From: Styela clava
Taxonomy: Eukaryota
DNA: 64,000 nt
NCBI RefSeq assembly: GCF_964204865.1
Contig: NC_135252.1
Location: forward strand, 17,732,001 to 17,796,000
Direction: 5' to 3'
The notes beneath the pieces were generated by a model. It ran no database searches. It saw only the letters and a program-made list of their open reading frames with translations, and was not told the origin of the DNA. A program made the translations under genes and the position numbers. Positions 29,311 through 60,108 of the stretch are shown here, piece after piece (the stretch's first letter is position 1; each line of letters begins with the position of its first letter).

Positions 29311-32300
29311 CTACAGCAATAGCCCAATACACAAGTAAAGCAAATAGCATATAATCAGTCCAATCACACTTAAACTGATCATCATTTCATTTTGCATCTT
29401 CTTGAAGATCGGGCTCTGTTTCATCAAGTTTTCCGCCAACTTCCCTCTCTCGTTTTCGTGCGGAAATGGAACTTTTGGAATATCTTTGCCGAGGAATTCA
29501 CACAGTGGTTTCCAACCTTCTCTCAGATCACATATAAGTAGGCGATCTTTAGGAGCTCTCTGAAGAGATGATATAGTAGGCAACAATTAAACCGGTACTA
29601 TACGTTATTAACTCGTTGTCCGCTTTCAAATGAATTTTAGATTTTTATAGAGAGCAAAAAACATAAATGCAATAAATAAGTAAGATTGTAAGCAGTGTTG
29701 CCAAATAATTAGCAGTTTAACTTTAACATAGATCACGCTCATACCGTGAGAACAGAATTGCAATGGTCTCGATAGCGTTTTCTGGCAACAGTCATGCTCA
29801 CTCCGCAAAATACATTCCACGGCAAGAAGTTGTAGTTGCCAAATAAAAAGCGTGCTGCAAAATTAAAGCAATTTTACATTTATTTACATTGCACATAATA
29901 TCACACAAATTCTCCGATTGAAAAGGAGAGACCAGGGGAAAAAATACCTGACTAGATCGCAACGAACGCGAACTCTATGTCACACGGTGCGCATTTTTTT
30001 ATTTTGATGACTTCATCAAACGTTAAATTAAATCCTATAGCGCCCACATTTTCAAAATAGCCTTCTGGCGACAACAATAATCTTTAATTACTGGAAATTT
30101 TGAAGCAATTGGTCTAGTTACTAGTAGTTAATAAGAAAATCGATTTTTTACAAGAAGAAGAAATGAAGAAATGAATGACTAACAATAATAACAACAACAA
30201 CATAATAATAACGAGAATATCGGTCAGGGACCGAAAACTCATCAATCGAAAGTTAGGGGATCCCCCAAAACAGCGCTTTTACTCCATAGTGATACCCACC
30301 CATCACTAATTAATTAATAACTCGCTAATTATATGACATAATTCGCCCAAAATCAATGGGCTTCTGGTCCGAGATATGATGAAGGCACATGCAAAATCTG
30401 GAGCAGATTCAATCTCGTTTTTGTGAGATATTGCATGCATCTAACAGACAGACAGACAAATTAAAATCGATAAGTATCAAGAGAGCTATGCTCAAATATA
30501 TGGACACGTAGCGCCACCCAGTGGGACTAATTTTGATGACGTCATATCGAAAAAAAAGAATAGCCTTCTGAAAAAAAATTTTATCTTCAACCACTGAAAA
30601 TTTCAAAGCAATTGCTCCAGTATTCGAAGAGAAAAGCGATTTCTTCAAAACGTGTCAAAGAACACTACAAGTACACTAAGACAAACAATAATAACAACAA
30701 CAACATAATATTGAAACGAACGCTATGTCCACTAGGTGTCCAATAACAAAGCGATCCATATCTATACTTCGTGTACAAAACCAATCAACAGGTCCACTTT
30801 GTGTTCAACAAGATTTCCCAAAATATTAGCGACTTAATTATAGGAAAGGCCGAAGGGGCATCCAACTGTATTTCGAGTTTTTGGCTCACATAAACATACG
30901 AACAAGATATTTACGTGAGTTACGCTTGTGATAAAGTCGACAAAAAATATTAAGATCGCTGAATTAGGCCAAAAAGTTCATTTTGAATGTTTTGATGTAT
31001 CTGAAAGTGGCTGCAAAACAGCTAGTGCCGGATTTAGGCGATGAGAGATTTTAGGCTATTCCGTTTGTAAAACCGGCCCATCCCTAATATGACATCAAAT
31101 ATTTTATAAAAGTTAATTTAACAATTCCAGTATTTTTTTCAAATGTATTATAACGCCATAAATGAATTTTATAATTCGCGGGAAATATGATAAGCTATTT
31201 TAGTTACAGCCCGGATACGTACACAACATCGAATGAGAAGTTGAACTCAAAATGAACTTATGAAGTTGAAGGCTGCAACGTCATGACACCAGAAAACGTG
31301 ATGGATTATTACTAGTCGCGCGTAATGGCTACTGATAAATAAAATTATTGTTTCATTTCTTAGAATAAACAGGACTACGATAAAAAAAGACATATTCATT
31401 TATTCAACTGTGATTAACGTTTTAAACGGAAATGTAACAAGAATATCGGTGATTTACGTAATTAAACAAAAATAGTTCACTTTTAAAATAGTACACTGGT
31501 TAAATTCCGGAACATGCGTTTTAACTTTAAAAATGAATGGTAGTTCGAAATTGAACGTCGAAGCCCTCATGAGCCACGGGGCTTCAGATTATTGTTAATT
31601 TGTCGCTAAATACACCAATCAATTATCATGAAAAATACTTTTCTCCTCAATTACCTAATGAATTATAATATTTACATATACACAGGATTTTTATTCATAT
31701 ATTTGGAAGCTGTAAAGAAGTAAATATTAAATAAATTCTCACATATTGTGGGTTATATCGCGTGTATTCGAGAAAGTCTTTTCATTTTGTTCCACTCACC
31801 AATAATAGACAGCGTATAAAAGAATTTGAATCCAGTATAAGATAATGTTGACAAAGCTAAGAATCCCCAATTTGTATTAAACATTTTTACTTGGTTGAGG
31901 AAGCTTTTTTCCCAAATTTCTTCGTTAGTTCGCTGTAGAAATATTATCTAAAGTAAGATAAATTCTTTTTACTTTTTCAACTTGGGTGACTTATAGCGAA
32001 CAAAATAAAGTAATAGACCTTATTTAATTGTTCTTACTTTAGCGTCAGGAAACGCTTCCAAAATTTCTTCCCAAAAAACTGCAAACGGAATATCAACTCC
32101 AACATCGACGTTTTCGTACATTCGGCGAAAATCCTCTTTTGTGCCTCCTTGCTGCAAAATCTGCAATATGCGTAAATAATTATTTGATGTCTACAGAGGG
32201 AATTAAGTGGAATCGTATGCTCGGAAACTTCCCAGCTATTTTTAATTTCTGTCTCACAAAGTATTTATTTCATTCATTGTTTAATCGGTGCCCCTCGCCT

Positions 32301-32575
32301 TTATCAGTGAATGAAATATATAATTTATTTTAGCTACACGTTGAAACGACAAGGGTAGAGGATTCAAGTTAAAAATTAATTGGCGATTTTGGATATATGA
32401 CATTTAACGATTACTAGACTCGACAAGAATGTCAAAATAAAATAACCTTAATCCATTCGTCTCCGAGATGATATAAATGGTGTTCAAAATCATAAACTGA
32501 ATATCCAAGAGTGTCAAGAACAGCAGCCATTGTTTTGGTTCCTGTTTTAACAAATCCTGCAACGATCACCTTCAT
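29311..32575 (-). CDS. P-loop sulfotransferase-like protein (Sulfotransfer_4-type) with C-terminal TM helix, copy A (252 aa)
   Basis: Exons 32447-32575 (MKVIVAGFVKTGTKTMAAVLDTLGYSVYD), 32038-32160 (DVGVDIP...WEEILEAFPDAK), 31800-31947 (IIFLQRTNEEIWEKS), 29745-29854 and 29311-29559 (APKDRLLICDLREGWKPLCEFLGKDIPKVPFPHEN plus hydrophobic tail). 759 nt, in frame. Confidence 0.9.
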
Positions 32576-35234
32576 CTTTGGTCAAATATTTTTGGTTTCT
32601 ACTCTCGTAGATTCCTAAATAAGGCTATGAAATTTGTTTTATTTGAGAAGTGGTTCCAGGTACCTAATTCAACGCAAATATGATACAAGTAATATTTGCA
32701 TCTTTTGTTGTCGACTAAATGTGTGGTCCCCTAAAGACGTTAAGGAATTCACAAGATCGCAATAATACGAATGAAATCTGAATACGATCTGGCAGTTTAC
32801 CGTGCATTGCCGCCGCATCTTAGAGAAGTAATGATTTATTATTGAGTAAGTCGATGCAACGCGAGTAACACTGAACACAATTAAATTAACATAGAAGGGC
32901 ATTCTAAATGTTCGTGTCGACCATGGATTAAATGCTTTCGCAATAGAAAATCCTTACTCTATTGAACAATCGGCTCTTTTAATGAGTGGAGCAATGGTGG
33001 TGACGGTTTCAAAATACCCCCCGTTAATTCCTGGCTGACAACTGTCCTTTCTACACTCCGAAATATGTTGTCCTTGTTATTTCAACAATACTATTAACAT
33101 CTCGAGTAGAGGAATCGTTCTTTATACTTTTGGCGAAACCTATTCTGTGCCAAAATAGTTTTCGTTTAAAAAAAACTAGTCGTAGGAAGATACAACTGGT
33201 TTAAAATTGCTTCGTGCGATTCGGAAATGCCAAATATATAAATAAAACGATTACACAGTATTGGCGGCACAACGTGTAATCTCACAAACGAACAGTTGTA
33301 AATCTATGTCTGTAAGCGGCTAAATATATCTATATATCTGTCGATAGTTTTCTACAAGTATTTTATTCTATCTGGCTTGCCTGGAGCAATTTTAGAATTG
33401 TATAAAGAGATCTATATCACATATAAACATCTCACCACTGACAGAAGCCAAAAATAAAAGATGTGGACACGATCATCCCATTAAACACTTTATCAGCAAT
33501 TTTCAAAAAGGAAACATCTTGTTTTTGAGCCCATCCCATTTAAATAACATAAATTCTCTATTTCATTGAAAACACCCAATTTGTCTAGTACAGTGACTTT
33601 CAACTCGCGTTCTGTGGTTGATTTGTGAGGAACCGCGTGTTCCGCGCCAAATTGTTGTTCCCCGAATATTTGTTTCATATTTCGGCAGATTTTATTTATT
33701 TTTTTCCGTTATTCTGGTAATAAACATGAAGAACCAGTTCTCAATTTGCAATATAAGTAATGTAAGACGATTGCCATTCTAGTGCTCACTTGCCTTTGAC
33801 CTCTGAATTGATCTCATACTAACTGAAAATCTAGAATTACCAGTTATATAAATTAACAGTGTCTGTATGAAGTCATTCTGATCATCCATGACTCAAATAT
33901 TCCTAGGCTAAAAATGGATGGACTCTAGAGTCTAGAATAGATCATACTGAAAGCAGAAAATCAACCTAGCTCGGCATTTCCAATTGCCTAGGCTGGGATA
34001 TAATTTTTGGTTTTTTACTTCGAGGTGAGAAAGTCAATATGACGACTTAGTCATGTAGCGAATCCAAGTCTCTCATTTTTTTGGCTACTAGTTTGAGGAA
34101 TAATCTGAATAAATCGAATATCCCAGTCTAAGCCCCACTGGTGAGGCCCCTTGCTCTTTTACAACTAAGCGGTGGAAGACGGTACCAATGGTCCAATCAA
34201 GTGCCTGTGGCCGTTAAACAGCTGTACTGAAAAAAGCTTAGCGGAGCAGAAATAGAATATAAGGAACCACTACATTTGGTTTTAGACTGACTGATTTTGA
34301 TACTGATGTTCGTGCTATTAGAAGATTTGTTCTTATTGAAGTAAGCCCAGATATCAAGTTAAAATGTTATTGCTGTTTTCATTAACCCGCAGCCTACCTC
34401 ATTACACCTATTCTCATTATTATTTTAACGTTTTGTGCCCTGAGTTTGGAAAACTTTTATTTGCATTTTATATTATTAGAAATCAATTTGTTTTTAAAAT
34501 CAATTTGATATTCTATTAGTCTTATGTAGTCAAAGTCTAGAGTCTGTGAAAAAGGGTCGATAAAATTATTAGTTAATTGGATCATTCATTTACGAAAAAC
34601 CTAAAGTTTGCATATGTTGTTATTCGCTACAATTCATAATATAAGTGTTGCGCGATTCAGAATGGTTGAACAACGCTGTTTAAAGAATAATAGGTCACGT
34701 GCACAGGCAGGTCCAGATCATGCCTGTCATAGACCCTAAGCTTGGTGCCTTATATATAAAAAATAATAATAATGAAAGTCATGTTCTATACCATCTGAAA
34801 TTGAATAAGTAAGTTTCAGTATCCATTGCTAATTGAGGGCCAAATTACCATTAATTTGCATTGTATATATTTTTTTTTTTTAAAGAAAGTTTTTAGATGA
34901 TTATTGAAAACATTATTTCAACCGGGTCAATATTGAGGTCTTTGTCGTTGTTTCATTAAACACTAAGGCCCCAACCATTGAAAAATCGTCTCTGAAAATG
35001 TCTGAGGTGCACCCTTTTTCTTTGTGCTCTAATCACGTGCTGATTTTGGTTAATAGTTAATCGAGCACTGCCCACAGGTCTCAAACTAAATACGGAACTG
35101 TCGATCAAAGCTAACTACAAAATTTGAAGTGTTGAAATCACATAACTGATTGGTATATTGTAACGTATAAAAATCATAAGGGTTCAATTAAAATGAATGC
35201 GTTGCGAGATCGAATATTGCACAGAAGTACTCTT

Positions 35235-37619
35235 CTACATAAATAGCCCAATGGACAAGTAAAGCAAATAACACAGGATCAGTCCAATCACACTTAAACT
35301 AATCATCATCTCATTTTGCATTTGTTTGAAGATCGGGCTCCGTTTCATCAAGTTTTCCGCCAACTTCCCTCTCTCGTTCTCGTGTGGAAATGGAACATTT
35401 GGAATATCTTTGCCAAGGAATTCACACAGGGGTTTCCAACCGTCTCTCAGATCAAAGATAAGTAGACGATCCTTAGGGGCTCTCTGCAAATGTGAAACGA
35501 GATAGCGATTAGAGACCGCTGACTTATCACTCTAACATCCTTATCAACCTAACACAGACAAACAAACAAATACCTATCAACATACTTACCGCTTGCGATC
35601 AACAAGTAACGATCGCGATCGAAAAGTAATAATACATTGCGATGATTGGGAACAGCAACACATTGAGATGCGTTCAGGGGACCTTCAGATTATTTTAAAG
35701 TCCGAAAAGGTAAATCCTAACTATCTTTTGAACTTTAATTTACAACCTACTCATACCGTTAGAACAGAGTTGCAATGGTCTCGATACCGTTTTCTGGCAA
35801 CAGTCATGCTCACTCCGTAAAATGCATTCCACGGGAAGAAGTTGTAGTTGCCAAATAAAACTCTAGCTGCAAAATGAAGATATTGTCGTGATTTCTGTAC
35901 GGTATAGAAATCACTGAGTTTGGAAATGTTAAATAACAGCTTGTCGGATTGTTTTGATTAAAGGGCATTCTAAATTTGTAATGTTATCTCCGTAGATGAC
36001 AAATTTAGCTGAAAATTGCATTGATTGCCAAATCAAAATATCCAAAAACCGTCCTAAATTCGATATCTGGATATTTCTAAAGTGATGGAACGGTGGTTAC
36101 AATACAATCACAAACTGCTATTAAGAATGCTTTTCTTAATATTTTTCTATGTCGAGCAGTGATCCTCAACCTTTTTTCGTTGAATTTATCCCTTTCGCCT
36201 ATTTTAGAACCCTTTATTCCCCTCTCACTATGCAGTACCTGCAGTAGAAAGTCCGGTACTTTGCTATTCAGTTTTTAAACGATCTTTACCTAATGTTATG
36301 CGCAAATCGCACCATCGCTTTTGTACAGTTAAAGTAGTTTATAACGGGTATATAAATAAGTAATATCGCAATAATAATGAACTAAAGAATATTTTAGTAA
36401 TACTACAGCAAATACAAGGGAAGTTTCTCCCCCAAAACGGAAAAATTCTGTTCGTTGATGGAGAGAATTACGATTTGCTATCAAAGTTTTAATATTTACA
36501 GGTTTTGTTACGAACAGAATTTTCGCCTTGTGGAAGTCTGTCTACACTTACCAACGATAGAAACCTTGGTAAAGAATTTGAATCCAGTATACGATAATGT
36601 TGACAACGCCAAGAATCCCCAATTTGTATTGAACATTTTTATTTGATTAAGAAGGCTTTTTTCCCACGCTTCTTCGCTTGTTCTCTGAGAGAATATTATC
36701 TGTAAATATAGATTTAATTTAACTTTCCTACATTTAATTTACTTCCGTGTGACATTGTGGAACAGGGCTACTCAACTATTTTCACCAAAGGTTCGTTTAC
36801 GAAACTTGAAAATTACTGGGGTCCGGACATTACAGAAAATTTTATTTCATCAAATAAACGAAACTTCAAATTCAATATTTAATTAAATTCAAGAGCAATG
36901 AATGGCTCGCAAATATGGACACAAATATCGCACACCGGTACCAGTACGACAAACTGTATAGCTGTGTATTTAAATTGTATCAAAATCATTTAAAACTATA
37001 AAACGATGCTTATGCTGCTAAAATAAACGAGCAAACGAGGTCCAAATTTTATGGTCGAAAGGTCCGAATTCGGACCGCGGTCCGCCAGTCGAGTAGCCAT
37101 GTTGTAGAATACAGAAAGTAGTACTTTTTCATACTTTGGCATCAGGAAACGCTTCTGAGATTTCTTCCCAAAATACTGAAAATGGAATATCAACTCCAAC
37201 ATCGACGTTTTCGTACATTCGACGAAAATCCTCTTTTGTGCCTCCTTGCTGCAAAATCTGCATTAAATAAAGGTTATCATTGTGTGTTTCTGAGCAATTG
37301 CCCCAAATAGGATTCTGAAAATATGAGTTATTTGAATGACAAAGGAATGTTACGATATTAGAATGCCGGAAAACGACGCCGATTCCGAGTTCGGAGTAAA
37401 TAAAATAAACTAGGCGGTCTCGTATCATATTCAGCGTATATTATTAATTTTCTCTCAAGTTCGATGGGCTTGAACTCAAGTCATAATTACCTTAATCCAT
37501 TCATCTCCGACGTGATACAAATGATGTTCCCAATCATAAACTGTATATCCAAGAGTGTCAAGAACAGCAGCCATTGTTTTGGTTCCTGTTTTAATAAATC
37601 CTGCAACGATCACCTTCAT
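35235..37619 (-). CDS. P-loop sulfotransferase-like protein with C-terminal TM helix, copy B (252 aa)
   Basis: Exons 37491-37619, 37135-37257, 36552-36699, 35757-35866 and 35235-35483. Exon sizes are the same as copy A (129/123/148/110/249) and the motifs are conserved. Confidence 0.9.
36763..37101. mobile_element. hAT-type MITE in sulfotransferase B intron 2
   Basis: TIR CAGGGCTACTC...GAGTAGCCATG; TSD TTGTGGAA/TTGTAGAA; same family as 38946-39259, in opposite orientation. Confidence 0.75.
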
Positions 37620-38945
37620 CTTTGGTAAAATATTTTAGTTTTTCTCATTAATTACTGAATAATACTGGAAATGAAATAATGTAAGGATTAAATGAGGCGG
37701 ATAAGTAATAATCTATTTCTTCTGAGTGAACATTCGAAAACACGCTAAAATCGTCTAAAACTACCAAAAGTTTTTTAGTAATTATGTAACAATAGATTCT
37801 AAACTCAACTGCCTAAAGTAATTTCCAATGATTCTTCCCAGTACGAAATACGTCAATAACCACGACAATTGCAGAAAAGGCATTTTGTCATCGACAAAAG
37901 TATATTGTCAGTTAGTCGCTGTTACAGCGGTCCGTTTCCGATGCCGCAAAAAACAATTTTGGTTGATGGTGAAATGCTCAACCATTTGAAATAGCCGGTT
38001 CCTCATTTTAGAATCTATGTTGATTTAATATAGTCTGGTCGGTATGCTCCCATTTTTTCAGTTTAGGTGTGTGTGAGTGTATGCGCGCGCATGTGTGTGT
38101 GTTTGTGGGAGGGGAGGGGGGGTACTTATATTTAAGTTCGGAATTAAAGGTGGTGTAACAGCTCGAAATTATGGGAAGGGGAAAGTTTAAAAAGGTTTGC
38201 CCCCTATGGAGGAGGTGTAGGGAAATCACTGACTCTGATCGACTTTAATTACGTCAGTTACCCAAATAGGAATTTCATATCATGTACGTTGTATAACTAA
38301 CTCATCGTAAACTCGAATCGTCTAAAATTGCACACCGCCAAGTCCAAGCAATTTGGTGAATCTATACCCGAAATAATAAGTGTTACCTAAGCCCATGTTT
38401 TCGATGTAATCCAATTTTATATAATGCGCAAATTATTTCATCTATGCACTGTGTTCGTCTTTATATAAGAAATTATATAATAACGCTTCTATTGGGAGGA
38501 TTTTTATACCTTTCCCCAATTAAGTTTTCCTCATACCTTCATTAATTCTGTGAACGTTTTAAACTAATAGATATGATTACGTATTTTACTAAAACCGTCA
38601 CCGGAAAAGATAACAAGCATAAACATAGGTTCATTTCAATTTGATTATTCAAAATATTTACATATTGCGGTAGATGCCATCCTGTTATTGCCACATCACT
38701 AATTTGCTCATCTGATTTCTTTGATTTTGTATATCACAAGTTATGGTTTCGAGAGGTGAAGCAATAAAACAATCTTGCCTATCTCATCTATTGTCTACAC
38801 CTTAAGATAAACAGAATAAATAAATAAAATAGATCAGAAAATTAGTGATAGTACAAAAGTTTCTATTTTAGGCATAATCTGGGCATGCACCAACAAACCA
38901 GACCAGAAGTCAACCCTTTTGCGAGGGAATCCTAGTAGTCTATAG

Positions 38946-41305: not shown

Positions 41306-44300
41306 ATGAAAGTAATTGTTGCGGGTTTCTCGAAAACTGGTACAAACACTATGGCGACTGCTCTTGGAATTCTTGGATATTCTGTCTATCACTGGGAGGA
41401 TCATTTTATACATTTGGAGAAAGAGTGGTTAAAAGTCAGTCGTAAATATTTATTGGCCATTTGTCTCAAACCTATTTGCAGAAAATATCGTACTATATGG
41501 GTGTGTGACACATCGTGCTGAACGTTAGGAATACGCTTGCCACCGTACCTCTGATTACCCGGCGGGGGTTCGCAGGTTCCAATCCAACGGGGATAATTAT
41601 GTGGCCGGTTCGATATATGATTAAGCCGTCTTATTGACTTTCCTTTTCTCACGATAAATATGTAAATCCTATCCTATAGGTGTCACTTCTGCGTTAGTTT
41701 TTGTACCTTTGCCTTGAGCAAATACATGTTTGAATAAGTCTGAATTGAGAATGTTAGACGTTATATACACGCTCAAATCAAATCTGTTTTAATTTTCACA
41801 TAGATATTGAACGAAGGCGGAAGAACAGAAGATTTCTATCACATGTATAAAAATGTTGACGCGGCTGCTGGAATTCCATTTTCTATGTTTTGGGAAGAAA
41901 TTTCAGAAGCGTTTCCTGAAGCCAAAGTACGTCGAACATGGGTCATTTTATTAAATTGCTGGCAATAAATTGCAAATAATAAATTGCAGATATCTGGATA
42001 CTGAATGATCTATAGAAGTGGTTCGCAACCTTTGTCGTTAAATTCCTTCCTTCGTCTATTTTTGAACTCCTTATTCTTTCATCTCTGTGGAACAGAAAAA
42101 ACTACTTTATATGTCCAATCTGCACAAGTCGATCTTCTGCTTTTGTACAATTCAAGTAGTATAGTATTAAGAATATTAGTGGTACTACAGCAAATACACA
42201 GCCAAAGCAGAAGCTCCCTGGAGCGGAACCACTCCCCGGTTGGGGAACGTTGTACCTATAAGAATTTATGATTGGAATGCAAGCAAACAAAAGTATTATG
42301 CTGATTCCCAGTAACTAATTTTACATTAGAAAAAGTTTTTTTTTCAATTATATCGACATTTTATTTGTATGATTGCAGACTGTCAATTATGATAGGTCAA
42401 AGAAAAGTAAAGATGTTCTCTTGTTATGATTCAGATAATTTTTCTCCAGCGATCAAGTGAGGATGAATGGGAAGAAAGTGCTATAAATCAGTTGAAAAAG
42501 TTTAATAAAGATTGGAAATTCCGATTGCTTCCAATCTTTTCTTACACTGGATACAAATTTTTTAATTATCTTGCGGTTATCAGTAAGTTCATTCAATTTC
42601 TACGTCTGTTTCCTTTACATTACTTTAATTTTGTTATCTCGGAAAAATTTGATACTCCTGTAGTATGCGAACCAAGATGGCGGACACCGGATCGTTGTAT
42701 GTGTACCAGGTCAGGGTTAGACCATAATTTCAGGTACAAATACTACGGGAGTCACTTGGCTAGTCCCCGAACTCGTAATAGAACTAAAATAAGGAAAATT
42801 AGAATAAAATTATGGCTTAACCCCAACCTGGTACACATACTACGTTCCGGTGACCGCCATCTTAATTAATATACTACATGAGTACCATTTATTGTCCAGA
42901 AATTTTCCTGGCAAACAGGTCGAACTCCATAAAAATTTACATGCCAGTGCAATGGTGTCTCCCTGTCAATAGCCTTGTTAAACACGAGGTGGGGCTATGG
43001 ATCGTTTTGTTATTATGTTGTTGTTGTTGTTAGTTTTTTTCTTGTTGTTGTGAATCATCGTTTTTCTCCTAAATCACTTATTCAATTGCCTTGAATTTTC
43101 AGTGGTCAACGGTTGTTGTTGTTGCTATTACTTTGATATTAGATTTGAAATTACTTCGTTTTGGCATTCGTGTCTATATATTTGAGCATTGCTTTCCTGT
43201 TTTCAAATTACACCTTTTTAATTAGCGTGAAACTATGCATTCCATATATCAGCATAATAGAGCATATTCTACAGTTGGATATTTGTGCTCATTATATTTA
43301 ATTATAATTTTTTTTAGATCGAGTTGTATATGGTAACCTTAGCGTTCTACCATGGAATTTTTGTAATGCTATAAGTCCTATCGTTGCCAGAAAAAGATAT
43401 CGGGATCATTGCTGTTCTGTCCTGACGGCAAGTGATTATTTTACTCTAATAGTTTTTACTTTGACTTATTATTCCGATGGCTGTCCAAACCTTCTATATT
43501 TATAAATTATCAAATTTATTAAATACGACCAAGCAGAGTGTCCAGAGCAGGGGTCACCAACCTTTTCGAAGCCGAGGGCTACTTTCTGGGTAAACCAGTT
43601 CAATGTACACTTCTAAAAAAGTTTAGTCGATTAAGCCTAAACTATCAATAATTACTGGTATTTAGTCAAGTAGAGACACTGATAAACTCTAGGATTCTTC
43701 AGAAAATCAAGCGATATCACAACGTTGAAATAAATTTCTATCAATGACACTTGCGTTGCATTTTAAAACTGAGTGTTTTCAAATTGGTTTTAAAGTGATC
43801 ACTACTATAATATCCTAGGAAACTGAAATGTACCTGGGTTATTTGCAAACACTCTGCACAGGCCTAAGATGAAATGGACCAAATTAACAGTTGTACTACC
43901 AAATGTTACAGAGGCGCGTTTCTTGACACTGTAACACTGAGCGAGACTTGCAGATCATCAGAAAGGCGTGTTCCGTGTTTGTTTCTGGTGAAGTAAATAT
44001 GAAAAAATGTTGATTCACAAAGATAGGTTGAACCAAACAATAGTCTCAATATAAACCCAATATTTGTCATCGTCAGGGGCAGCCCTGCCTTTACGGCCGA
44101 CCAGCAGCAAAATTTCACCTGCCATTGGTTTTCAATTCGCTGCCGCTGTAACGGCAGCTCTCCATTGGTGTGTGGCAGCTAAAAAGTCTGTCGCCGTGGG
44201 TTTTGGCTTGGCCATAGCGGGCCATGGTTCGGGAATACCGCCGTGGTTTTGCGGCAGATTTAGACGCAACAAAATACTTAAAACTGAACTTGAAAAAACG

Positions 44301-44920
44301 CGTATTAGTGGAAGGTGATATCTGTGTGATGACATAATTGGAAGACTATTGAATGACCCGTCACATTGCTGAGGTCAAATCAGGTTAATTGTTACAAAAA
44401 TTAATATAGTGCCAAACACTTCCCACACGGTTCCCATATAAGTGTGATTAGTACAAGAATAGCAGAACAAAAATTAATTGATGTAGCTTACTGATAAGCG
44501 CCGTTATTGCTAAATCTGTAACATCCTCTGAACACCCATTGATTCACTATAAAATTTTCCGGCTCTGACATTTTAATTTTAGGATTCATTTATTTATTAT
44601 TCACACTTTTTTATTAATCTTGGGATTTGACTTGATAAACGAACAACTTATACACGTTCATCAATATATGATTTCAGAGAGCGCCAAAAGATCGTTTGCT
44701 AATCTGCGACCTGAAAAGAGGCTGGAAGCCGTTGTGTGAATTCCTGCAGAAAGAGATACCTGATACTCCTTTTCCACACGAAAATAAAAGAGGAACACTG
44801 GTTAAAACTGGGACGGAAAGAAATGCAATGTTTAGAAAAATGCAAACTGAAATGATATTTAGCTTAACTATTATTGCAGTGATAGTTTGCACACTATTTC
44901 TTGTACTCCTATTGCAATAA
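41306..44920 (+). CDS. P-loop sulfotransferase-like protein with C-terminal TM helix, copy C (250 aa, most divergent)
   Basis: Exons 41306-41434 (MKVIVAGFSKTGTNTM), 41804-41926, 42435-42582, 43318-43427 (GC donor) and 44678-44920. 753 nt, in frame. Confidence 0.88.
41520..41677 (+). mobile_element. Possible tRNA-derived SINE fragment
   Basis: B-box-like GGTTCCAATCC; 3' ATCCT repeat tail; TAAGCCGTCTTAT also found at ~20181. Confidence 0.35.
42651..42886. mobile_element. Palindromic GG-ended MITE (~235 bp)
   Basis: Imperfect ~80-bp TIRs containing CCAAGATGGCGGACACCGG; same family as 46633, 49481 and 54987. Confidence 0.8.
43548..44120 (-). mobile_element. Decayed hAT (Charlie/GTF2IRD2-like) transposase remnant in sulfotransferase C intron 4
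   Basis: TIR-like CAGGGGTCACCAACC at 43548. ORF 43906-44118 contains LFGSTYLCESTF...NKHGTRLSDDL, typical of the hAT C-terminal dimerisation region. Right end not defined. Confidence 0.7.
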
Positions 44921-46632
44921 TACGTGGATGACTCATAAAAATAAGATGTGTTGAAGCGAGATAAACAATAGTTATCTAAGAAAATGTTTTTAATTCATCT
45001 TTCAACTCAAAATCTCTTTCTCGCGCATGAACTAAAAACAAAAGGTTCATGCAAAAAAATATGGATATTAGAGAGGTCTAGGTTACGGTTTTATATAAGC
45101 ACAACTTTCCTATATATTGCTGTGCATAAACACAGTTACGACTCGTTAATCATTGACTTCATCAGAAATACCATGTTGCAGGCAATTTGTTTGAGTAAGA
45201 CTTTTAACTATATTTAACACTGCATAAAGCAGTTTATATGTTATACCATTTCACAGTAACTTATTGCAGTCATTCCCCATAGACATACTATTGTACTATA
45301 TTTGAAAATTAATTTAAGCGACACAGCATAACTCCATAATAGATAACATATTCATTCAGTATTAAACTTAATGTGCAATACACCAATATCCGTTAATTCC
45401 AATGTGACGATAACGATAGAATGCTCGTTTATTTGATCTTGAGTATTCCGTGAATATGATAGGCATGTTGCAAACACCGTAAATCATCCAACACCGTTGT
45501 TTCCTAGTATTTAAACACAACTTAATAATGAACATGGTACTTTGCAGACAGCTGTCACGAACCATAAATTTTCAGATCGCGTAATAAAAGTTATAAGAAA
45601 GTAGAGAAAGAAGTGGTTTGTTTGTTAAATTTGTTCCTTCGCCTATATTGGAACTTCGTTTTCTTCCCTCAAATTACATGATAACTACTTCAATTGTTCA
45701 ATCCTTAATGAATCCTTAACAATGAGTCCTATACTCACGCTTTTGTACAGTTTAAGTAGTTTATGTGTGTACAAATAAGCATTGTAGTAACTATAATAAA
45801 GAAAGAAGGTATGTTCGTATAGGTGTACCAAAGCAAATACAGAAACCATATATATATAGTCAATTCTAGTTTTCTGGAAAGGCGCGGTTTGTGATGGAAA
45901 TTACCCACGGAAGATGTCTTCGGGAAGAAAACAATTCACCATTAGAGCTTAGACGGATGCGTTTCGGGTAAAGAATGAAGTCTGTAACTGAATAGAAAGT
46001 ACCGACAGTAAAAAGAGAAAAGACTGTCATAAAAACAGGAAGTCGATAATAAGTGAGGGCATTCAAGACAGAATTCACACGACTAATATATATTGGATGG
46101 ATATGGGATAGCACATTTAGGGCTGGGAATAGTTAACCGGTTCATCAGTTCACCGTTTTAGTTGCCTAACGGTCACGATTAACTTTGAGCGCAAATCGTC
46201 ATCCAAGGTAGCACTCGATTTCTAATGTAAATTATAGGAATAAAAATTAATTCGCACGGAATTGTGATGCGGACATCAACACCAACGGCGGTTAGCCGGG
46301 TAACCGATCAATGTGTGAAATGACCAGTATATATATATATATATATATAGCCAATTGCTTCTCTGTTTCGAATAATCATGAGTGCACTTGATTCAAGTAT
46401 ACAATACAGAAATGTTTAGCTAAAGCTGGTGAGTCCGCATGGTCAGTAGACCTATCACGTGCAATACAGACTAGGAAAGGGTAACGAGCAAAATTGGCAG
46501 AAACCTTGGTGAAACGAAGCCCGATCTTTAACAGATAAAAAATGGAATGATGGTGTGATTGGACCGATCATATGTTATTTTGGTTTTACTTGTGCATAGG
46601 ACTTGCTGTAGTATCACTATGGTACAATATTT

Positions 46633-46856
46633 GGTACTCCCGAAGTATGTGAACCAAGATGGCGGAGACCGGAACGTAGTATGTGTACTAAGTTAGGCCA
46701 TAATTTCAGGTACAAATACTACGGGAGTCACTTGGCTAGTCGCCGAACTCGTAATAGAACTAAAATAAGGAAAATTTGAAAAAAAAATATGGCCCAACTG
46801 GTACACATACTACGTTCCGGTGTCCGCCATCCTAGTTCACATACTTCGGGAGTACC
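46633..46856. mobile_element. Palindromic GG-ended MITE
   Basis: GGTACTCCCGAAGTATGTGAAC...GTTCACATACTTCGGGAGTACC termini. Confidence 0.85.
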
Positions 46857-48675
46857 CATAATTTTCATGTATATAATTGTTTTGAATGGTGACAAGACAT
46901 ACCTTACGTAAATATATATCACATAACTTTCGGAATGCTGAATATAACACTAGTCGTCAGCTGTAAATTTTTCGTGATGTCTTTCTATTACCCATCCTAA
47001 TATTTATGTAAGAATAACTATATATATATATCGAATATTCAACCATCCAGGTTTAGACAACTCGCAAAATATCCGCTGGAATGAGTGTAGTTTAGTTACC
47101 TTTGTAAAGTTCTGGTTTCGGCTCTGATTTTGAAATGCTGTTGACAAAAGCTTGCAGAATCATGTGGGCAGGTTTGCAAAATTTAAAAACCACGGGAACA
47201 GATGAAGGAAACTTTTTCAAACTTCATAGGTTGACCATTTGCATTTATCAACAGGTTTATTATAACCTCAATATGGTTGTATTCTATATATACGACTTGT
47301 AGACGATAAGATCATAATCAGATTATTTGTTGTAGAATAGCTTCAATTTTCTGCTTACATTCCGTTAAACTGTACGCCCCAGGGGATTATATTCAACAGT
47401 TTAACAATTAGTTAGAATCATGGTTTTCAGATAAAATGTTTAATTGCGGTTGCTTAAAGTCACCCAAGGTTTACATAATAAATCTGAAATAATATTTGAT
47501 TTTTATTGCCTAGCGTAGTATGTTGCCGTCTGGCAAAGTGATAAAGACGATGATGTTTCTTCTTATTTCACGCATTGAGTTAAATCGAGTACATTTCACC
47601 ATGGAGTTTGGATAGAAATCTCGCACAATAAAAAATACTTATCATCTATTACCAGCGGTTCCCAAAGGGTGCGGCGCATTAGTGCGTCTTGACGAGTGGG
47701 TAGGTGCGCCGCGAAAATTGACAAAATATTTTAGATAGTGTATTTATTATAAATGTTCTTTTGTTCCTTATTTTAAATGTTGCGTATATAAATCAATAAA
47801 TCCCTTTTTTACGCCGTTTACTTCCTGTTACGTAGTGTCTGCCTCTAATGTTACGTAACAATAGAACGATAAACTACTTTGTGCAATTTCGTGAGCTGCA
47901 GTTCATATATCTAAAGAACAGAGTTTAGCGAATATGGGTGATTTTTCCAGCATTTCGAAGAAAAATCGAGCAGAGATGAGGAAGAAGGGTTGAACAAAAG
48001 GTTTGGGAATCGTTGATCTATTACTTTTCAGGACGAAAAGGAACCGTAATTCCGCATGTGTTCGAGGGTGATAGTTTTTATTTTTTTTTCCAAGACACCA
48101 TTTGGTATTTGAACTAAACCAATCATGTGATATTGCCAACTAAAATTGCGATGTCTTGGGTATAACCAGATCACCAGTAGACAAAAATAATATAGGTTGA
48201 TATAAGACAAAGCAATAAGACAGTAAAACACAGCCTATCGTGAGACTTCAAAACGCTAGAATGAATAACAAGCACGCAGGCAGGTAAAAGCAAGTAGCTA
48301 TTGCTTGAATGCGATTTTGACATCATAATCGCAAAGTTCGTGGGGAAAACAGCAAGCTATGACGCAAATACATAACAGAAATTCGACAGAAATGTTAGAT
48401 TCGATGAAACACCGCTCCACGTTTTAAAATAGAAAATTTGGGGGAGTATGATTTAAAATTTGAATTGTAAGCGCAACCTGTATTCTTGGCACTAACTGAA
48501 TACACACTATTGTTTCAATATATATTATATATATATATGCGTCATTTATCGGACGAAATAAATTTTTAAAAATGATGTCGTTATATTTCTTAAATCAAAA
48601 TGTTTTTGCTTTTATCGGAAGTTTTCAGGAGCGTATCGTTTTATCTAGTTTTATAAACGAAATAGCACATACAAT

Positions 48676-51600
48676 ATGAAGGTGATCGTGGCAGGGTTCA
48701 TCAAGACCGGAACCAAAACAATGGCCGCTGTTCTTGATATTCTCGGATATTCGGTTTACGATCTGGAACATCATTTCTATTATCTGGAAAAAGATTGGCA
48801 GAAGGTAGGCATCGATATATTAAACCACGAAAAGGTGAAAGGGGAGGTTGCATAACTTCGATTGAAAATATATAAGCACAACATCCTCTTAATATAAATA
48901 TCCCGTTTATGATGATATTCATGACGCCATTAATAATGCTTTATTTGTGTTGCTTGATGTCGCTGCTGAGCTCTTTCTCCTTTGCTGGAATACATGCTAC
49001 CTAGTGCTTAGGTTTATGATTTGTATATTTGTATTTGTATTCGTGTGTTCACAGTTGAACTTCCGCACAAACTATATCTCTAACTTTTTTACTTCATATA
49101 ATAAAAATAACAATCCAAAAAATACATTGTGATTGTATTGGCCTGGCGACTAACTGACTTTTTTAGCCATCTCGATATTGGATATACACGCATTAATGTT
49201 ATAGCCTACGCCATGTTGTCAATACATCAAAAAACCAACAAAAATGTTGTCCGTTTTTTGACTCGTGAGGTAGCAGTGTTCTTCCAAATAACCGCTTCAA
49301 TTATATTAGATCTTGAAAGAAGGCGGAACAAAGGAAGATTTCCACCGAATGTACAAAGATGTTGATGTTGGAGTCGATGTCCCGTTCGTAATATTTTGGG
49401 AAGAAATATTGGAAGCGTTCCCGGATGCTAAGGTTACCTTCAATAGCTTGGATATTGTGTTTTCTATTTATAAGATAATGGGTCCTTCAAGTATGTGAAC
49501 CAGGATGGGGGTTAGGCCATAAATATATTCCAATTATCCTTAGTTCTATTACGAGTTCGGGGACTAGCCAAGTGACTCCCGTAGTATCTGTACCTGGAAT
49601 TATGGCCTAACTCTAACCTGGTACACATACTACGTTCCGGTGTCCGCCATCTTGGTTCACATACTTCGGGAGCGCCAGATAATGAAACTTCTGCAAACAA
49701 GCAAAGAGGGAGATGTTTTATTTCTGAAACATTTCTTCTATCTTTTTTATCATAATGAAGTGGGATTGTAGTGAATACGGTGTCCGTGCTTTTTCACTGA
49801 TTGATTTTTTAATCTATTTGGACTGATTACACATCTGATTTTACATCTCCTTGATAACGGTGATAACGCTTTTCAAGATAATATTTCTTCAACGAACGAG
49901 CGAAGATGTCTGGCAGAAGAGTGTCGAAAATCAAGTAAAAATGTTCAACAAAAATTGGTTGTTCAGATCTCTCTCTGTTCTATCCTACACAGGATACAAA
50001 TTCTTTGCTCATGTAGGCCTCGTCAGTGAGTATGTTACTGTCTTGCGCAGGGGTGTGCAACCTTTATTACAGGAGGGCCAGATACAAGTAACTGGGTGAA
50101 GCCGCGGAACGCGGGCACATTTATTTAAGATAGCGTTTCCCGTAGTTGCCGGCACAAAAAATTGTTACTTTTTGTTATTGAGCTTACGGCATTGTTACGA
50201 GTCCTTACAAAAATGGTGAGTTAAAACGCATACATTTCTAAAGAAAACTGCTTTTCAAATTTATTGTCACACTGACTTTGAGAAACAAGTCTTTATAACA
50301 TTGCGTATTTTGCTAGCTAGTTTTGCTCATATGACAGTGGCGCTTAGGTACCGGTATAGGCTTTACGATGCAAATTGGAATCGCTCGCATATACCACGTT
50401 AAAGAAATTAAAAACTCGTTTCGCGGACACACCATTCAAAATTGTCACTTCTCTGCTAGTACAATTTCTCCGCACAATTTTTCTTTGTGGGCGCATTTGG
50501 CCCGCGGGCCGCAGTTTGCACATCCCTGGTCTTGTGCTTTAAAGACGATCAATATACATTGGAATCAAAACATTGGAATCAAATGTTCCCATAAAACCAT
50601 AAACTTCTTCCAATCATCATACAACCACCTTGTAATTTTTAAACATAAAAATTCAATAAGTCACAAAAATGAGTATGAGATCGATACCAAGGTGGCACCA
50701 AAAATGTGTTCAAAAATAACAACTTTATTGCTCATGTCATCAAATAAGCCGGACAAATGGCATTTTAAACCGCACTGACAAAGTGAAAGGCTATTTATAT
50801 TTTTTGTACAATTATTGAAACAGATATCAGATACCATGTTTTTTTAGTTACATATGTTGTTTTCTAAACTTCATATTCTATATTTCCGAGATCGCATAAT
50901 GTTCGGCAACCATACTTTCTTTCCCTGGAATGTTTTCAATGGAATCAGCAGCACTGTTACCAAAAAAAGATACCGTGATCACTGCAGTTCAGTTTTGGAG
51001 GTGGGTTATATATTAGTATTAGCTTATTGACACACAATGGACCTATAGATCGTTTTGCAAGAAGTTTGCTCTTGTCATGTCTGGGGTTTTATTGTGAATA
51101 AAAACGCTTTTCGCCGCAACCAAGGAAATAATTAATTTCAAATTTTCGGTAACTAAAGAAGTAGCTAGAGGAATGTCATTCATATGTTTTTCATACCACT
51201 CTGATTGATACGGAGCTTGATATTTTGAATCACGTTTGAGATTTTGAGGGCATTGCGCGACCTACTGGCATTCCATTACGCTTGTCCGCCGACGACCTTT
51301 TGAGAAAACTCAGTGCTAAGGCGTTGCGGACTTACTGATGTTTAGAGAAATAGATGGATTTCATTTCGAATGCGACGTTTTATGCCCGCAAGCCTTATTA
51401 GTCAGTAAAGGGCGATATTCTTATTTAAGCACACGATAGCAATAATGCACAATGGGAAACACGAATAAGGCCGAAAATTTAAGAGAAGACACGTAATTAA
51501 TTTCGTCTCATATTATATTACCAATGCGCCTAACTTCGGACTCTTACTAATTACAAATAAAAAAATTTTAACTTATAGTTCTTACTGAATTTCGACTTAT

Positions 51601-52204
51601 GTTACCAATTTCATTTTCTATATAGCAAATTCCAGAATATTTAGTGCCGGATAAATATGGCCGACAAATGGATATCGTTGTAAACAGGATATTTTGTTCC
51701 GATGTTTGACACCTTCATGGCAGTCATGTTGGCCATATGTTTGTTTGATCATTGCTATATTGTTTATCAAATTATAACTGTCTTTACAATTATTCGCAAC
51801 TTGTAGCGTGGACGCGTTGGTGATCATACATTACAATCATACCACGATACCGGATGTGGCTCTATTTATTATTGCTCTTCAGATCAATAAAACAGTGTTC
51901 CAAATACACAAGCAAAATCATAAAATAATTATGTTCTATGTGCTAACATGTTTAGCGAGCTCCGAAAGATCGTTTACTTATCTGCGATCTGCGAAAAGGT
52001 TGGGAACCACTCTGTGAATTTTTGGGCAAAGACGTTCCAGATACACCTTTTCCACACGAGAACGAAAGAGGAAAGTTGGCAGAAACATGGATGAAGCGAA
52101 GTCCGATTTTTAAGAAGATGCAAAATGAAATGATGATTAGTTTAAGTGCAATTGGACTGATATTATGCTACTTAGTCTACTTATTGTTTGTTGGCTTGTT
52201 TTAG
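48676..52204 (+). CDS. P-loop sulfotransferase-like protein with C-terminal TM helix, copy D (252 aa)
   Basis: Exons 48676-48804 (MKVIVAGFIKTGTKTM), 49310-49432, 49878-50025, 50891-51000 and 51956-52204. Same exon sizes as copies A and B. Confidence 0.9.
49481..49676. mobile_element. Palindromic GG-ended MITE, internally deleted copy
   Basis: Perfect 8-bp TSD AGATAATG; reverse orientation relative to 54987. Confidence 0.82.
50048..50528. mobile_element. hAT-type MITE
   Basis: TIR CAGGGGTGTGCAA...TTGCACATCCCTG; TSD GTCTTGCG/GTCTTGTG. Confidence 0.8.

Positions 52205-58678: not shown

Positions 58679-60108
<1,430 letters not shown>

What the first reader, a model, noticed from the sequence alone, without database searches (positions are those of the whole stretch)
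29311..52204. Cluster of four intact tail-anchored Sulfotransfer_4-type genes in a tunicate
Seen: four complete 5-exon paralogs with identical intron positions. Each has an N-terminal P-loop (GFxKTGTxTM), a QRT/SxExxWxxS segment, a GWKPLCEFLxKxxPxxPFPHEN motif, no signal peptide, and a single hydrophobic helix at the extreme C-terminus. Established: these motifs resemble the PAPS-binding 5'PSB/3'PB elements of the Sulfotransfer_4 family, known mainly from fungi and bacteria. That family differs from soluble SULTs and from type II Golgi sulfotransferases with N-terminal anchors. Ascidians make sulfated tunic polysaccharides and sulfated small metabolites. Inference: this is an expanded, uncharacterised class of cytosol-facing, membrane-anchored sulfation enzymes, possibly acting on lipophilic metabolites or tunic precursors, and possibly patchily distributed or horizontally acquired.
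Basis: partly seen in the sequence, partly recalled or inferred. Interest (0 to 1): 0.75.

Follow-up and report, generated by a model that had tools for sequence, protein, structure and literature searches.

The report
Membrane-tailed sulfotransferase genes in sea squirt
Four neighbouring copies of a sulfotransferase-like gene with a membrane-anchoring tail lie here in the sea squirt Styela clava; three look functional and one is doubtful, they belong to a very large ascidian and coral gene family that databases list only as unnamed proteins, and their chemistry has never been tested.

Summary
Window 29311-52204 carries four 5-exon paralogues, A and B on the minus strand and C and D on the plus strand. 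Exon lengths (129/123/148/110/249, or 243 in C) and intron phases (0,0,1,0) are identical. Every gene matches Pfam PF17784 Sulfotransfer_4 exon by exon.

The organism is Styela clava. A, B and D equal RefSeq "uncharacterized" proteins LOC120343290, LOC120342766 and LOC120343149. Contigs from RNA-like runs carry gene B introns 2-4 and gene A intron 2 spliced exactly as modelled. dN/dS is 0.09-0.16.

Each protein ends in a 22-24-residue uncharged hydrophobic stretch. No other hydrophobic segment is present.

Gene C is doubtful:
- it needs a GC-AG intron;
- it has Gly where the catalytic Asp sits (SmSULT D91);
- both of its RefSeq models are truncated.

The cluster is not special. The genome holds at least 80 further loci. 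The tail is shared by most relatives in tunicates and reef corals. Horizontal acquisition is not supported, and tunic-polysaccharide sulfation does not fit the topology.

This scan had already noted the same family on other DNA of this genome (s1-825804, s1-813430). My verdict is an ordinary member cluster of an uncharacterised, tail-anchored variant of a known enzyme family.

The parts
29311..32575 (-). Gene A (LOC120343290), 5 exons, 252 aa: 32447-32575, 32038-32160, 31800-31947, 29745-29854, 29311-29559
   Evidence: Exon model. All five exon translations are exact substrings of P0002 / XP_039268359.2. PF17784 scores 178.1 bits. The intron 2 joint appears in RNA-like runs X1 and X2, and an exon 1 contig ends exactly at 32447.
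35235..37619 (-). Gene B (LOC120342766), 5 exons, 252 aa: 37491-37619, 37135-37257, 36552-36699, 35757-35866, 35235-35483
   Evidence: Exon model. All five exon translations are exact substrings of P0133 / XP_039267664.2. PF17784 scores 181.1 bits. Joints 35483>35757, 35866>36552 and 36699>37135 appear in 3 of 3 RNA-like runs and 0 of 1 DNA-like run.
41306..44920 (+). Gene C (LOC120343356), 5 exons if the GC-AG intron 4 is used, 250 aa: 41306-41434, 41804-41926, 42435-42582, 43318-43427, 44678-44920. This is the doubtful copy.
   Evidence: Exon model; the intron 4 donor is GC. RefSeq products are 172 aa (exon 4 skipped, frameshift into exon 5) and 187 aa (stop just after exon 4). Codon 41870-41872 encodes Gly where A, B and D have the Asp that aligns with SmSULT D91.
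48676..52204 (+). Gene D (LOC120343149), 5 exons, 252 aa: 48676-48804, 49310-49432, 49878-50025, 50891-51000, 51956-52204
   Evidence: Exon model. All five exon translations are exact substrings of P0136 / XP_039268203.2. PF17784 scores 185.1 bits.
29314..29385 (-). Gene A C-terminal hydrophobic tail (24 uncharged residues, last codons before the stop)
   Evidence: best 19-residue KD window 2.61, with 1 residue after it.
35238..35309 (-). Gene B C-terminal hydrophobic tail (24 residues)
   Evidence: best 19-residue KD window 2.35, with 1 residue after it.
44852..44917 (+). Gene C C-terminal hydrophobic tail (22 residues)
   Evidence: best 19-residue KD window 3.02, with 2 residues after it.
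52130..52201 (+). Gene D C-terminal hydrophobic tail (24 residues)
   Evidence: best 19-residue KD window 2.48, with 3 residues after it.
46449..46604 (+). Decayed relic of a fifth copy's last exon (distal part and tail), with stops and a frame break
   Evidence: Local tblastn of P0002 residues 196-250 gives 36% identity, E 7e-4. The translation shows three stops.

Best explanation
This is a tandem, partly inverted cluster (A and B leftward; C, a relic and D rightward) of Styela-specific paralogues of a tunicate-wide family of PF17784 sulfotransferases.

Proposed mechanism: the roughly 210-residue N-terminal domain binds PAPS through the K-T-G-T loop and the R...S element. An Asp, the equivalent of Schistosoma SmSULT D91, acts as the base that transfers sulfate to a hydroxyl of a small acceptor. 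The last 22-24 residues form a tail anchor inserted post-translationally into an endomembrane, most likely the ER given the high hydrophobicity and the uncharged C-terminal end. The catalytic domain therefore faces the cytosol, where PAPS is made, and meets lipophilic acceptors at the membrane surface.

The large, tandemly duplicating repertoire suggests diversified substrates, either small-molecule or xenobiotic conjugation or lineage-specific sulfated metabolites.

Genes A, B and D fit this. Gene C has probably lost catalysis and may be mis-spliced.

Shown here: gene structure, family membership, conservation of the motifs, purifying selection, and splicing and expression of B (and part of A).

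Inferred only: membrane insertion, orientation, organelle, PAPS use and substrate class.
For: Family membership:
- PF17784 hits are exon-wise and colinear. Exon 1 scores 34-41 bits, exon 2 scores 28-36 and exon 5 scores 54-59, against a cut-off of 22.8.
- The database proteins for A, B and D score 178-185 bits over profile positions 1-214.

Solved relatives:
- 9KF1 (E 1e-20), SgdX2 8Y9P (1.2e-17) and the Schistosoma sulfotransferases 4MUA/5TIV/5TIZ (about 1e-9 to 1e-10).
- With a family profile the E-values are 7e-44 to 1e-33.

Conserved residues in the 78-sequence alignment A2:
- T11, G12, W96 and S99 in 78 of 78
- K10 in 76 of 78
- R90 in 77 of 78
- D66 in 72 of 78

D66 aligns with the Asp of the T-D-L-P segment in all Schistosoma chains. 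PMC7167500 calls that residue catalytic D91 (passages read).

Tail:
- It is present in all four genes.
- It is present in 108 of 124 full-length word-search relatives and 87 of 106 full-length representatives.

Selection: A-B dN/dS is 0.158 and A-D is 0.091. In pairs with C, dS is saturated while dN is 0.20-0.24.

Expression and splicing.

Independent support for the exon junctions: an intronless 252-aa paralogue (L002, 72% identical to A) is colinear with them.

Precedent for lipid-surface association in this family: Aspergillus oryzae LdrG and LdrH (PF17784) bind lipid droplets (bioRxiv 10.1101/2022.11.24.517872, passages read).
Against: - No enzyme assay, localisation or structure exists for any tail-bearing member.
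- The tail call rests on Kyte-Doolittle hydropathy alone.
- The runs used as RNA are labelled only 'RNA? (a guess)'.
- Exon 4 has no Pfam hit in 4 of 4 genes. Exon 3 scores only 13.6-17.3 bits, below the cut-off.
- Gene C lacks the Asp, and 4 of 78 aligned relatives also have Gly there. Either the base is dispensable in some members or some members are not enzymes.
- The genome also has many classical PF00685 sulfotransferase loci (103 matches), so no gap in sulfation capacity needs filling.
Confidence: 0.6

Rival explanations
1. The genes were acquired horizontally, from a bacterium, a fungus or another marine organism, and then expanded.
For: The family is large outside animals: 6547 representatives at E<=1e-3. 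Among named close relatives only tunicates, scleractinian corals and one aphelid appear. In the quick tree the coral clade sits among tunicate lineages, so simple vertical descent is not demonstrated.
Against: All four genes have four spliceosomal introns. Across the genome's paralogues, matches end near residue 85-87 and restart near 164-170, so at least two intron positions are family-wide. The family is present in Styela, Ciona, Clavelina and Oikopleura, so any transfer would predate the tunicate radiation. A, B and D fall in an 8-row Styela-only clade with SH-aLRT 99. GC content is like the rest of the window. Starred branches do not force more than one origin of the tunicate label.
Confidence: 0.08
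2. They sulfate tunic polysaccharides or other secretory-pathway glycans, like Golgi type II sulfotransferases.
For: Ascidians make sulfated glycans. This rests only on titles and abstract openings seen in the search listings.
Against: The P-loop starts at residue 7, so there is no N-terminal signal anchor. The highest hydropathy in exons 1-4 is 1.14 or less. With a C-terminal anchor only, the catalytic domain stays cytosolic; this follows from established knowledge of tail-anchored proteins. The genes are not related to Golgi carbohydrate sulfotransferase families: only PF17784 is significant, and PF13469 is sub-threshold.
Confidence: 0.04
3. The hydrophobic tail targets another compartment, such as the mitochondrial outer membrane, peroxisomes or lipid droplets, rather than the ER. 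Alternatively it acts as a hairpin or an oligomerisation helix.
For: Fungal PF17784 proteins LdrG and LdrH sit on lipid droplets. Several Ciona, Clavelina and Styela paralogues have weaker tails (KD 1.2-1.8) followed by 17-29 more residues.
Against: In the four window genes the tail is long (22-24 residues), strongly hydrophobic (KD 2.35-3.02) and ends without basic residues. By general knowledge of tail-anchor sorting, this points to the ER. The fungal proteins use amphipathic helices, not a terminal membrane span.
Confidence: 0.2
4. The proteins use sulfation as an activating step, turning a hydroxyl into a leaving group in a biosynthetic or bioactivation pathway, rather than as a terminal conjugation.
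For: Both characterised solved relatives work this way. The Schistosoma enzyme activates the prodrug oxamniquine (PMC7167500, passages read). SgdX2 is titled an 'activating sulfotransferase' in sungeidine biosynthesis (seen only as a reference entry in PMC11677658).
Against: No neighbouring biosynthetic genes were seen in the window. A family of 80 or more copies looks more like a broad-substrate repertoire.
Confidence: 0.12
5. Gene C is a decaying or non-catalytic copy, not a fourth working enzyme.
For: Gly replaces the catalytic Asp. Asn replaces K14 and His replaces D29, two columns that are at least 90% conserved. Intron 4 has a GC donor; the only nearby GT would break the frame. One RefSeq model skips exon 4 and another stops right after it. 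A decayed fifth copy lies next to it.
Against: All 250 codons are open although dS against the other copies is saturated. Exon 5 keeps the family motifs and the tail. The GC donor is followed by A-A-G-T, the usual context of working GC donors (recalled). In addition, 4 of 78 relatives also carry Gly at that column. No reads were laid on C.
Confidence: 0.5

Closest known systems
Schistosoma oxamniquine-activating sulfotransferases (SmSULT-OR, ShSULT, SjSULT; PDB 4MUA, 5TIV, 5TIZ), after which InterPro IPR040632 names PF17784 the S. mansoni type
   Same: They share the Pfam family, an aligned P-loop, the R...S element, the catalytic Asp (D66 of gene A aligns with SmSULT D91) and the C-terminal G-W-x-P-L-C-x-F-L motif.
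   Different: The flatworm enzymes are soluble proteins of 253-263 residues whose alignment ends before any hydrophobic tail. They are distant (single-sequence E about 1e-9). Their natural substrate is not given in the passages I read.
Bacterial PF17784 structures: SgdX2 (8Y9P) and 'sulfotransferase family protein' 9KF1
   Same: These are the best solved matches, at E 1.2e-17 and 1e-20 with gene A's protein and 4e-43 and 7e-44 with the family profile. The match covers the full catalytic domain.
   Different: They are 212-256 residues long without a membrane tail. SgdX2 acts in secondary-metabolite biosynthesis (reference title only).
Aspergillus oryzae LdrG and LdrH
   Same: They are PF17784 proteins held on a lipid surface, with the catalytic-type domain in the cytosol.
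   Different: They attach to lipid droplets through amphipathic helices, not a C-terminal transmembrane tail. The role reported for them is in droplet number and size, not a shown sulfation.
Other tail-bearing PF17784 genes of tunicates and reef corals, including the arrays this scan noted elsewhere in the genome (s1-825804, s1-813430)
   Same: They have the same length class (about 240-275 aa), the same motifs and the same terminal hydrophobic tail. All are annotated 'uncharacterized protein'.
   Different: In the window genes the first roughly 86 residues are split by an extra intron; in most other Styela copies they are a single exon. Coral proteins appear as whole 243-aa products called on metagenome contigs, which suggests single-exon genes (an inference).
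Classical cytosolic SULTs (PF00685) and Golgi type II sulfotransferases
   Same: All use PAPS-binding 5'-PSB and 3'-PB logic. This is general knowledge, as restated in PMC11677658 (passage read).
   Different: They belong to different Pfam families. They are either soluble or N-terminally anchored with a luminal domain. The catalytic base is not the Asp used here.

Membership tests
Pfam PF17784 Sulfotransfer_4 (S. mansoni-type sulfotransferase) | Profile HMM score above the gathering cut-off of 22.8 bits | tested here: met
   Exons 1, 2 and 5 of all four genes each pass alone (28.4-59.2 bits). Exon 3 scores 13.6-17.3 bits, and exon 4 has no hit in 4 of 4. The database proteins for A, B and D score 178.1, 181.1 and 185.1 bits.
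Pfam PF17784 Sulfotransfer_4 | 5'-phosphosulfate-binding loop (K-T-G-T) near the N-terminus | tested here: met
   Present at residues 10-13 in 4 of 4 genes. In alignment A2, T11 and G12 occur in 78 of 78 and K10 in 76 of 78.
Pfam PF17784 Sulfotransfer_4 | 3'-phosphate-binding Arg ... Ser element | tested here: met
   R90 and S99 are present in 4 of 4 genes; in A2 they occur in 77 of 78 and 78 of 78. Assigning this element as the 3'-PB is by analogy with other sulfotransferases (recalled).
Pfam PF17784 Sulfotransfer_4 | Catalytic Asp equivalent to SmSULT D91 | tested here: inconclusive
   Asp is present in A, B and D; Gly is present in C. Alignment to the Schistosoma chains comes, and the D91 label from PMC7167500. 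The 2-residue offset between chain and paper numbering is my inference, checked against L149.
Pfam PF17784 Sulfotransfer_4 | PAPS-dependent sulfate transfer | not testable with these tools
   Needs an enzyme assay.
Tail-anchored membrane proteins | A single transmembrane segment at the extreme C-terminus | tested here: met
   Uncharged runs of 24, 24, 22 and 24 residues end at the last residue. The best KD 19-mer scores 2.35-3.02 with 1-3 residues after it. This rests on hydropathy only.
Tail-anchored membrane proteins | No N-terminal signal sequence or other membrane span | tested here: met
   The best KD 19-mer in exons 1-4 is 1.14 or less in all four genes, and the P-loop begins at residue 7. 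No SignalP-type tool was available.
Tail-anchored membrane proteins | Post-translational insertion with the N-terminal domain in the cytosol | not testable with these tools
   Needs localisation and topology experiments.
Golgi type II sulfotransferases | N-terminal signal anchor with a luminal catalytic domain | tested here: not met
   There is no N-terminal hydrophobic segment, and the Pfam family is different.
Recently horizontally transferred gene | Restricted to one lineage, intron-poor and nested within a donor clade | tested here: not met
   Each gene has four introns. The family occurs in four tunicate genera. The window genes fall in a Styela-only clade. Deep rooting was not resolved.

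The most novel reading that the evidence does not exclude
The tail-anchored PF17784 family may be the missing enzyme set that makes the sulfated lipophilic signals and defence compounds of ascidians. One candidate product is the egg-derived sulfated steroid SAAF, which attracts sperm in Ciona (abstract openings in the listing). The enzymes would work on the cytosolic face of the ER, next to the membrane-bound enzymes that hydroxylate such substrates. The rapid birth and death of copies would then underlie species-specific chemistry. The same invention is shared with reef corals, so it would be an old animal solution that most phyla lost.
Probability: 0.1. Interest if true: 0.8.

Novelty: new variant of a known kind. 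Interest (0 to 1): 0.42.

Why it matters
Known PAPS-dependent sulfotransferases are either soluble or anchored by their N-terminus with the active site inside the Golgi. A sulfotransferase held on a membrane by a C-terminal tail, with its active site in the cytosol, would be a third arrangement. It would suit oily substrates that never leave the membrane.

I found no description of such an enzyme. The search 'tail-anchored' plus 'sulfotransferase' found 16 papers, of which 12 were listed; none is about such an enzyme, judging by title and abstract opening. Searches for PF17784, Sulfotransfer_4 and IPR040632 found 5 and 2 papers, and none deals with tunicates or corals.

The family is among the larger gene expansions of Styela clava and is shared with reef-building corals, yet every member is unnamed. 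For this particular window the value is modest, since it is one of many such arrays. Gene C does offer a natural example of a copy that has lost the catalytic residue.

Tried and rejected
Things tried that led nowhere or were set aside:

- Replacement of classical SULTs. I asked whether this family stands in for missing cytosolic sulfotransferases. It does not: PF00685 gives 103 matches in the same genome.
- Coral sulfotransferase expansion paper (PMC12314368). The expansion it reports is PF00685, not this family (passages read).
- Didemnum genome paper (PMC8704543). It lists two tunicate-only orthogroups with 'sulfotransferase family domains', ENOG502CNPV and ENOG502CXMB (passage read). I could not tell whether they are this family, because supplements are closed and no other paper holds those ids.
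- Retrocopy hallmarks. No poly(A) tract is visible downstream of the intronless paralogue L002. Retroposition is therefore inferred only from its lack of introns at family-wide intron positions.
Cluster look-ups instead showed that two such clusters contain Acropora and Porites proteins. Contigs reach 3.4 Mb, so I read them as coral DNA.
- Deep phylogeny. The FastTree and quick IQ-TREE runs warn of long-branch joins and cannot be rooted reliably. I draw no donor or order of events from them.
  - For one search, 43 of 149 representatives were dropped for length outside 225-320 aa, along with the partial or long named proteins P0003, P0007, P0024 and P0033.
  - For one search, only 51 named rows were used.
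  - Gene C is in no alignment or tree, because I made no joined product for it.
- Names for representatives. Of the 20 representatives I picked, 7 had a name: 4 Styela, 1 Clavelina, 1 Oikopleura and 1 aphelid. The other 13 had none. The absence of other animal phyla from the best 150 is therefore weak evidence.
- The search for 'SgdX2' alone returned grant numbers.

Full report
**What is in the sequence**

Translating the open frames of one copy and comparing them with the whole window gave five colinear matches at four places. I read the codons at each boundary and fixed exon coordinates numerically.

| Gene | Strand | Span | Protein |
|---|---|---|---|
| A | - | 29311-32575 | 252 aa |
| B | - | 35235-37619 | 252 aa |
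| C | + | 41306-44920 | 250 aa |
| D | + | 48676-52204 | 252 aa |

- Exon lengths are 129, 123, 148, 110 and 249 nt (243 in C).
- Intron phases are 0, 0, 1, 0 in all four genes.
- All 16 of 16 acceptors are AG.
- 15 of 16 donors are GT; C intron 4 has GC.
- Intron lengths differ widely, from 90 to 1945 nt.
- DNA similarity between copies is confined to the exons.
- B and C are head to head, 3.7 kb apart.
- A decayed piece of a fifth copy's last exon, with three stops, lies at 46449-46604 between C and D.

The spliced models were searched exon by exon, and the joined step was left out.

**Family**

Each gene matches Pfam PF17784 (Sulfotransfer_4) exon by exon and in profile order.

| Exon | Profile positions | Bits | Versus cut-off 22.8 |
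|---|---|---|---|
| 1 | 1-37 (1-40 in D) | 34-41 | above |
| 2 | 58-92 | 28-36 | above |
| 3 | 93-128 | 13.6-17.3 | below |
| 4 | none | no hit in 4 of 4 | - |
| 5 | 175-214 (175-213 in C) | 54-59 | above |

**Organism and annotation**

- A search of the window's own genome found an intronless full-length paralogue on another contig. I fetched it as L002; its ORF is 252 aa and scores 168.8 bits.
- Used as a word-search query, it returned itself as 'uncharacterized protein LOC120332197 [Styela clava]' at 100% identity. This names the organism.
- The same search and the cluster look-up returned proteins that contain all five of my exon translations as exact substrings:
  - A is XP_039268359.2 (LOC120343290).
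  - B is XP_039267664.2 (LOC120342766).
  - D is XP_039268203.2 (LOC120343149).
- These proteins score 178-185 bits on PF17784.
- The intronless copy is colinear across all four junctions. This is independent support for the splice model.

**Expression and constraint**

The one read-laying run covered window 31700-37650.

- Contigs of three RNA-like runs from two studies carry joints 35483>35757, 35866>36552 and 36699>37135. These are exactly gene B introns 4, 3 and 2, seen in 3 of 3 such runs.
- Two of those runs carry gene A intron 2.
- A DNA-like run that covers all 30 bins has none of these joints.
- A 10-letter loose end at 37259 in one run reads, by my eye, as the end of B exon 1.
- The runs are labelled only 'RNA? 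(a guess)'.

Amino-acid identity summed over exons:

| Pair | Identity |
|---|---|
| A-B | 223/251 |
| A-D | 188/251 |
| A-C | 153/251 |

Nei-Gojobori counts pooled over exons give dN/dS 0.158 for A-B (dS 0.37) and 0.091 for A-D. In pairs with C, dS is saturated and dN is 0.20-0.24. The copies are therefore old and constrained.

**The tail**

- In each gene the last 22-24 residues are an uncharged hydrophobic run that ends at the final residue.
- The best 19-residue Kyte-Doolittle window scores 2.35-3.02, with 1-3 residues after it.
- No window in exons 1-4 exceeds 1.14, and the P-loop starts at residue 7.
- By these simple measures the proteins fit the definition of tail-anchored proteins.

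**Catalytic residues**

In a 78-sequence alignment:

| Residue | Present in |
|---|---|
| T11, G12 (P-loop) | 78 of 78 |
| W96, S99 | 78 of 78 |
| K10 | 76 of 78 |
| R90 | 77 of 78 |
| D66 | 72 of 78 |

- Solved relatives are a bacterial 'sulfotransferase family protein' (9KF1), SgdX2 (8Y9P) and the Schistosoma oxamniquine-activating sulfotransferases.
- D66 aligns with the Asp of the T-D-L-P segment of every Schistosoma chain.
- PMC7167500 calls that residue catalytic D91 in SmSULT (passages read). I inferred a 2-residue offset of chain numbering and checked it against L149.
- A, B and D keep this Asp.

**Gene C is the exception**

- It has Gly at that position (codon 41870-41872), Asn for K14 and His for D29.
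- Its intron 4 donor is GC, and the only nearby GT would break the frame.
- Its two RefSeq products are truncated. One, of 172 aa, joins exon 3 to exon 5 out of frame. An older one, of 187 aa, stops just after exon 4.
- Against decay: all 250 codons are open despite saturated dS, exon 5 keeps the motifs and the tail, and 4 of 78 relatives also have Gly at column 66.
- I rate 'non-catalytic or decaying' at about even odds.
- 'Four intact' is therefore true of the reading frames but not established for function.

**The cluster in context**

In the Styela genome:
- PF17784 gives 154 matches. Only 150 of 280 candidates were scored, so this is a lower bound.
- By my hand count, 80 of the 150 listed rows start at profile position 1-7, on 15 contigs. 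Many lie in tandem arrays.
- The window genes' own split N-terminal exons are not among those rows.
- With gene A's protein as query, most other copies match residues 1 to about 86 in one open frame. Only the window genes split this stretch at residue 43/44, so this subfamily has an extra intron.

Outside the genome:
- A profile word search found 580 proteins at E<=1e-10 among 2854 candidates.
- Of the best 120, 38 carry an organism name: 29 tunicate (Styela, Ciona, Clavelina) and 9 scleractinian coral.
- Unnamed 'metagenome' clusters include Acropora and Porites proteins.
- The exhaustive search gave 6547 representatives at E<=1e-3, 1725 at E<=1e-10 and 81 at E<=1e-30.
- Of 20 representatives I looked up, 7 had names: 4 Styela, 1 Clavelina, 1 Oikopleura and 1 aphelid (Amoeboaphelidium). 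The aphelid protein also has a tail.
- The tail is present in 108 of 124 full-length word-search relatives and 87 of 106 full-length representatives.

Trees:
- A, B, D and the intronless copy form a 4-row clade with support 99-100.
- That clade lies within an 8-row Styela-only clade in the IQ-TREE run.
- The corals form one clade.
- Deep branches are unreliable because of long-branch warnings and the lack of a root.

This scan had already noted the same family elsewhere in this genome: a nine-copy array (s1-825804) and s1-813430. I saw these after I had formed my own reading, and they agree with it.

**Mechanism, with what is shown and what is inferred**

Shown:
- gene structure
- family membership
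- motif conservation
- purifying selection
- splicing of B and part of A
- the conserved terminal hydrophobic run

Inferred:
- The domain binds PAPS and uses Asp66 as a base.
- The tail is inserted post-translationally, most likely into the ER.
- The domain faces the cytosol, and the acceptors are small lipophilic molecules at the membrane surface.

A precedent for lipid-surface PF17784 proteins exists in Aspergillus oryzae. LdrG and LdrH bind lipid droplets by amphipathic helices (passages read).

**Alternatives weighed**

- Horizontal acquisition is not supported for these genes, given their introns, the pan-tunicate spread and the Styela-only clade. Whether the family is patchy among animals stays open: no other animal phylum appeared among the named hits, but most hits are unnamed.
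- The genome also has many classical PF00685 loci, so this family does not replace them.

**Literature**

- PF17784 or Sulfotransfer_4 occurs in 5 papers, and IPR040632 or the two orthogroup ids in 2. None is on tunicate or coral members.
- 'Tail-anchored' with 'sulfotransferase' found 16 papers, 12 listed. None describes such an enzyme, judging by title and abstract opening.
- The Didemnum genome paper mentions tunicate-only orthogroups with sulfotransferase domains. Supplements that might identify them were closed.

**Verdict**

The cluster is one ordinary member of a very large family that is already annotated but unnamed. The family's tail-anchored architecture appears undescribed and untested.

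Noticed in passing
window 46449-46604 (+): A decayed fragment of a fifth copy's last exon lies between genes C and D. It covers the distal motif region and the hydrophobic tail and has three stops.
   Followed up: partly
window 42637-42964, 46625-46865, 49538-49687, 54969-55225: Copies of a short element with inverted-repeat arms (MITE-like). Two of them lie inside introns of genes C and D, and arm pairs are 79-96% alike.
   Followed up: no
window 58679-60093 (-): Three open frames translate to actin-like sequence, so a multi-exon actin gene lies downstream of the cluster.
   Followed up: no
L002 998-1756 (G000:C17:6601915-6602667) and L001 860-1630 (G000:C14:7903361-7904116): Two intronless, intact, tail-bearing PF17784 genes. 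The first is 72% identical to gene A and looks like an old retrocopy of this subfamily, although no poly(A) remnant is visible.
   Followed up: partly
window 35481-35679 and 36675-37271 (introns of gene B): Summed contig depth is very high in all four runs (up to about 31,000 in the DNA-like run). This indicates high-copy repeats inside the introns.
   Followed up: no
G000, many contigs: Classical sulfotransferase PF00685 is also expanded, with 103 matches and arrays on C6 at 3.29-3.53 Mb and C4 at 15.29-15.36 Mb.
   Followed up: no
window 15156-15470 (-): An open frame rich in His, with a poly-Ser run. It lies inside the stretch another first-stage note describes (s1-810879).
   Followed up: no
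proteins P0011-P0026 and similar (ENA contigs): Coral relatives appear as complete 243-250 aa products called on metagenome contigs. This suggests single-exon genes in corals, in contrast to 4-5 exons in Styela.
   Followed up: no
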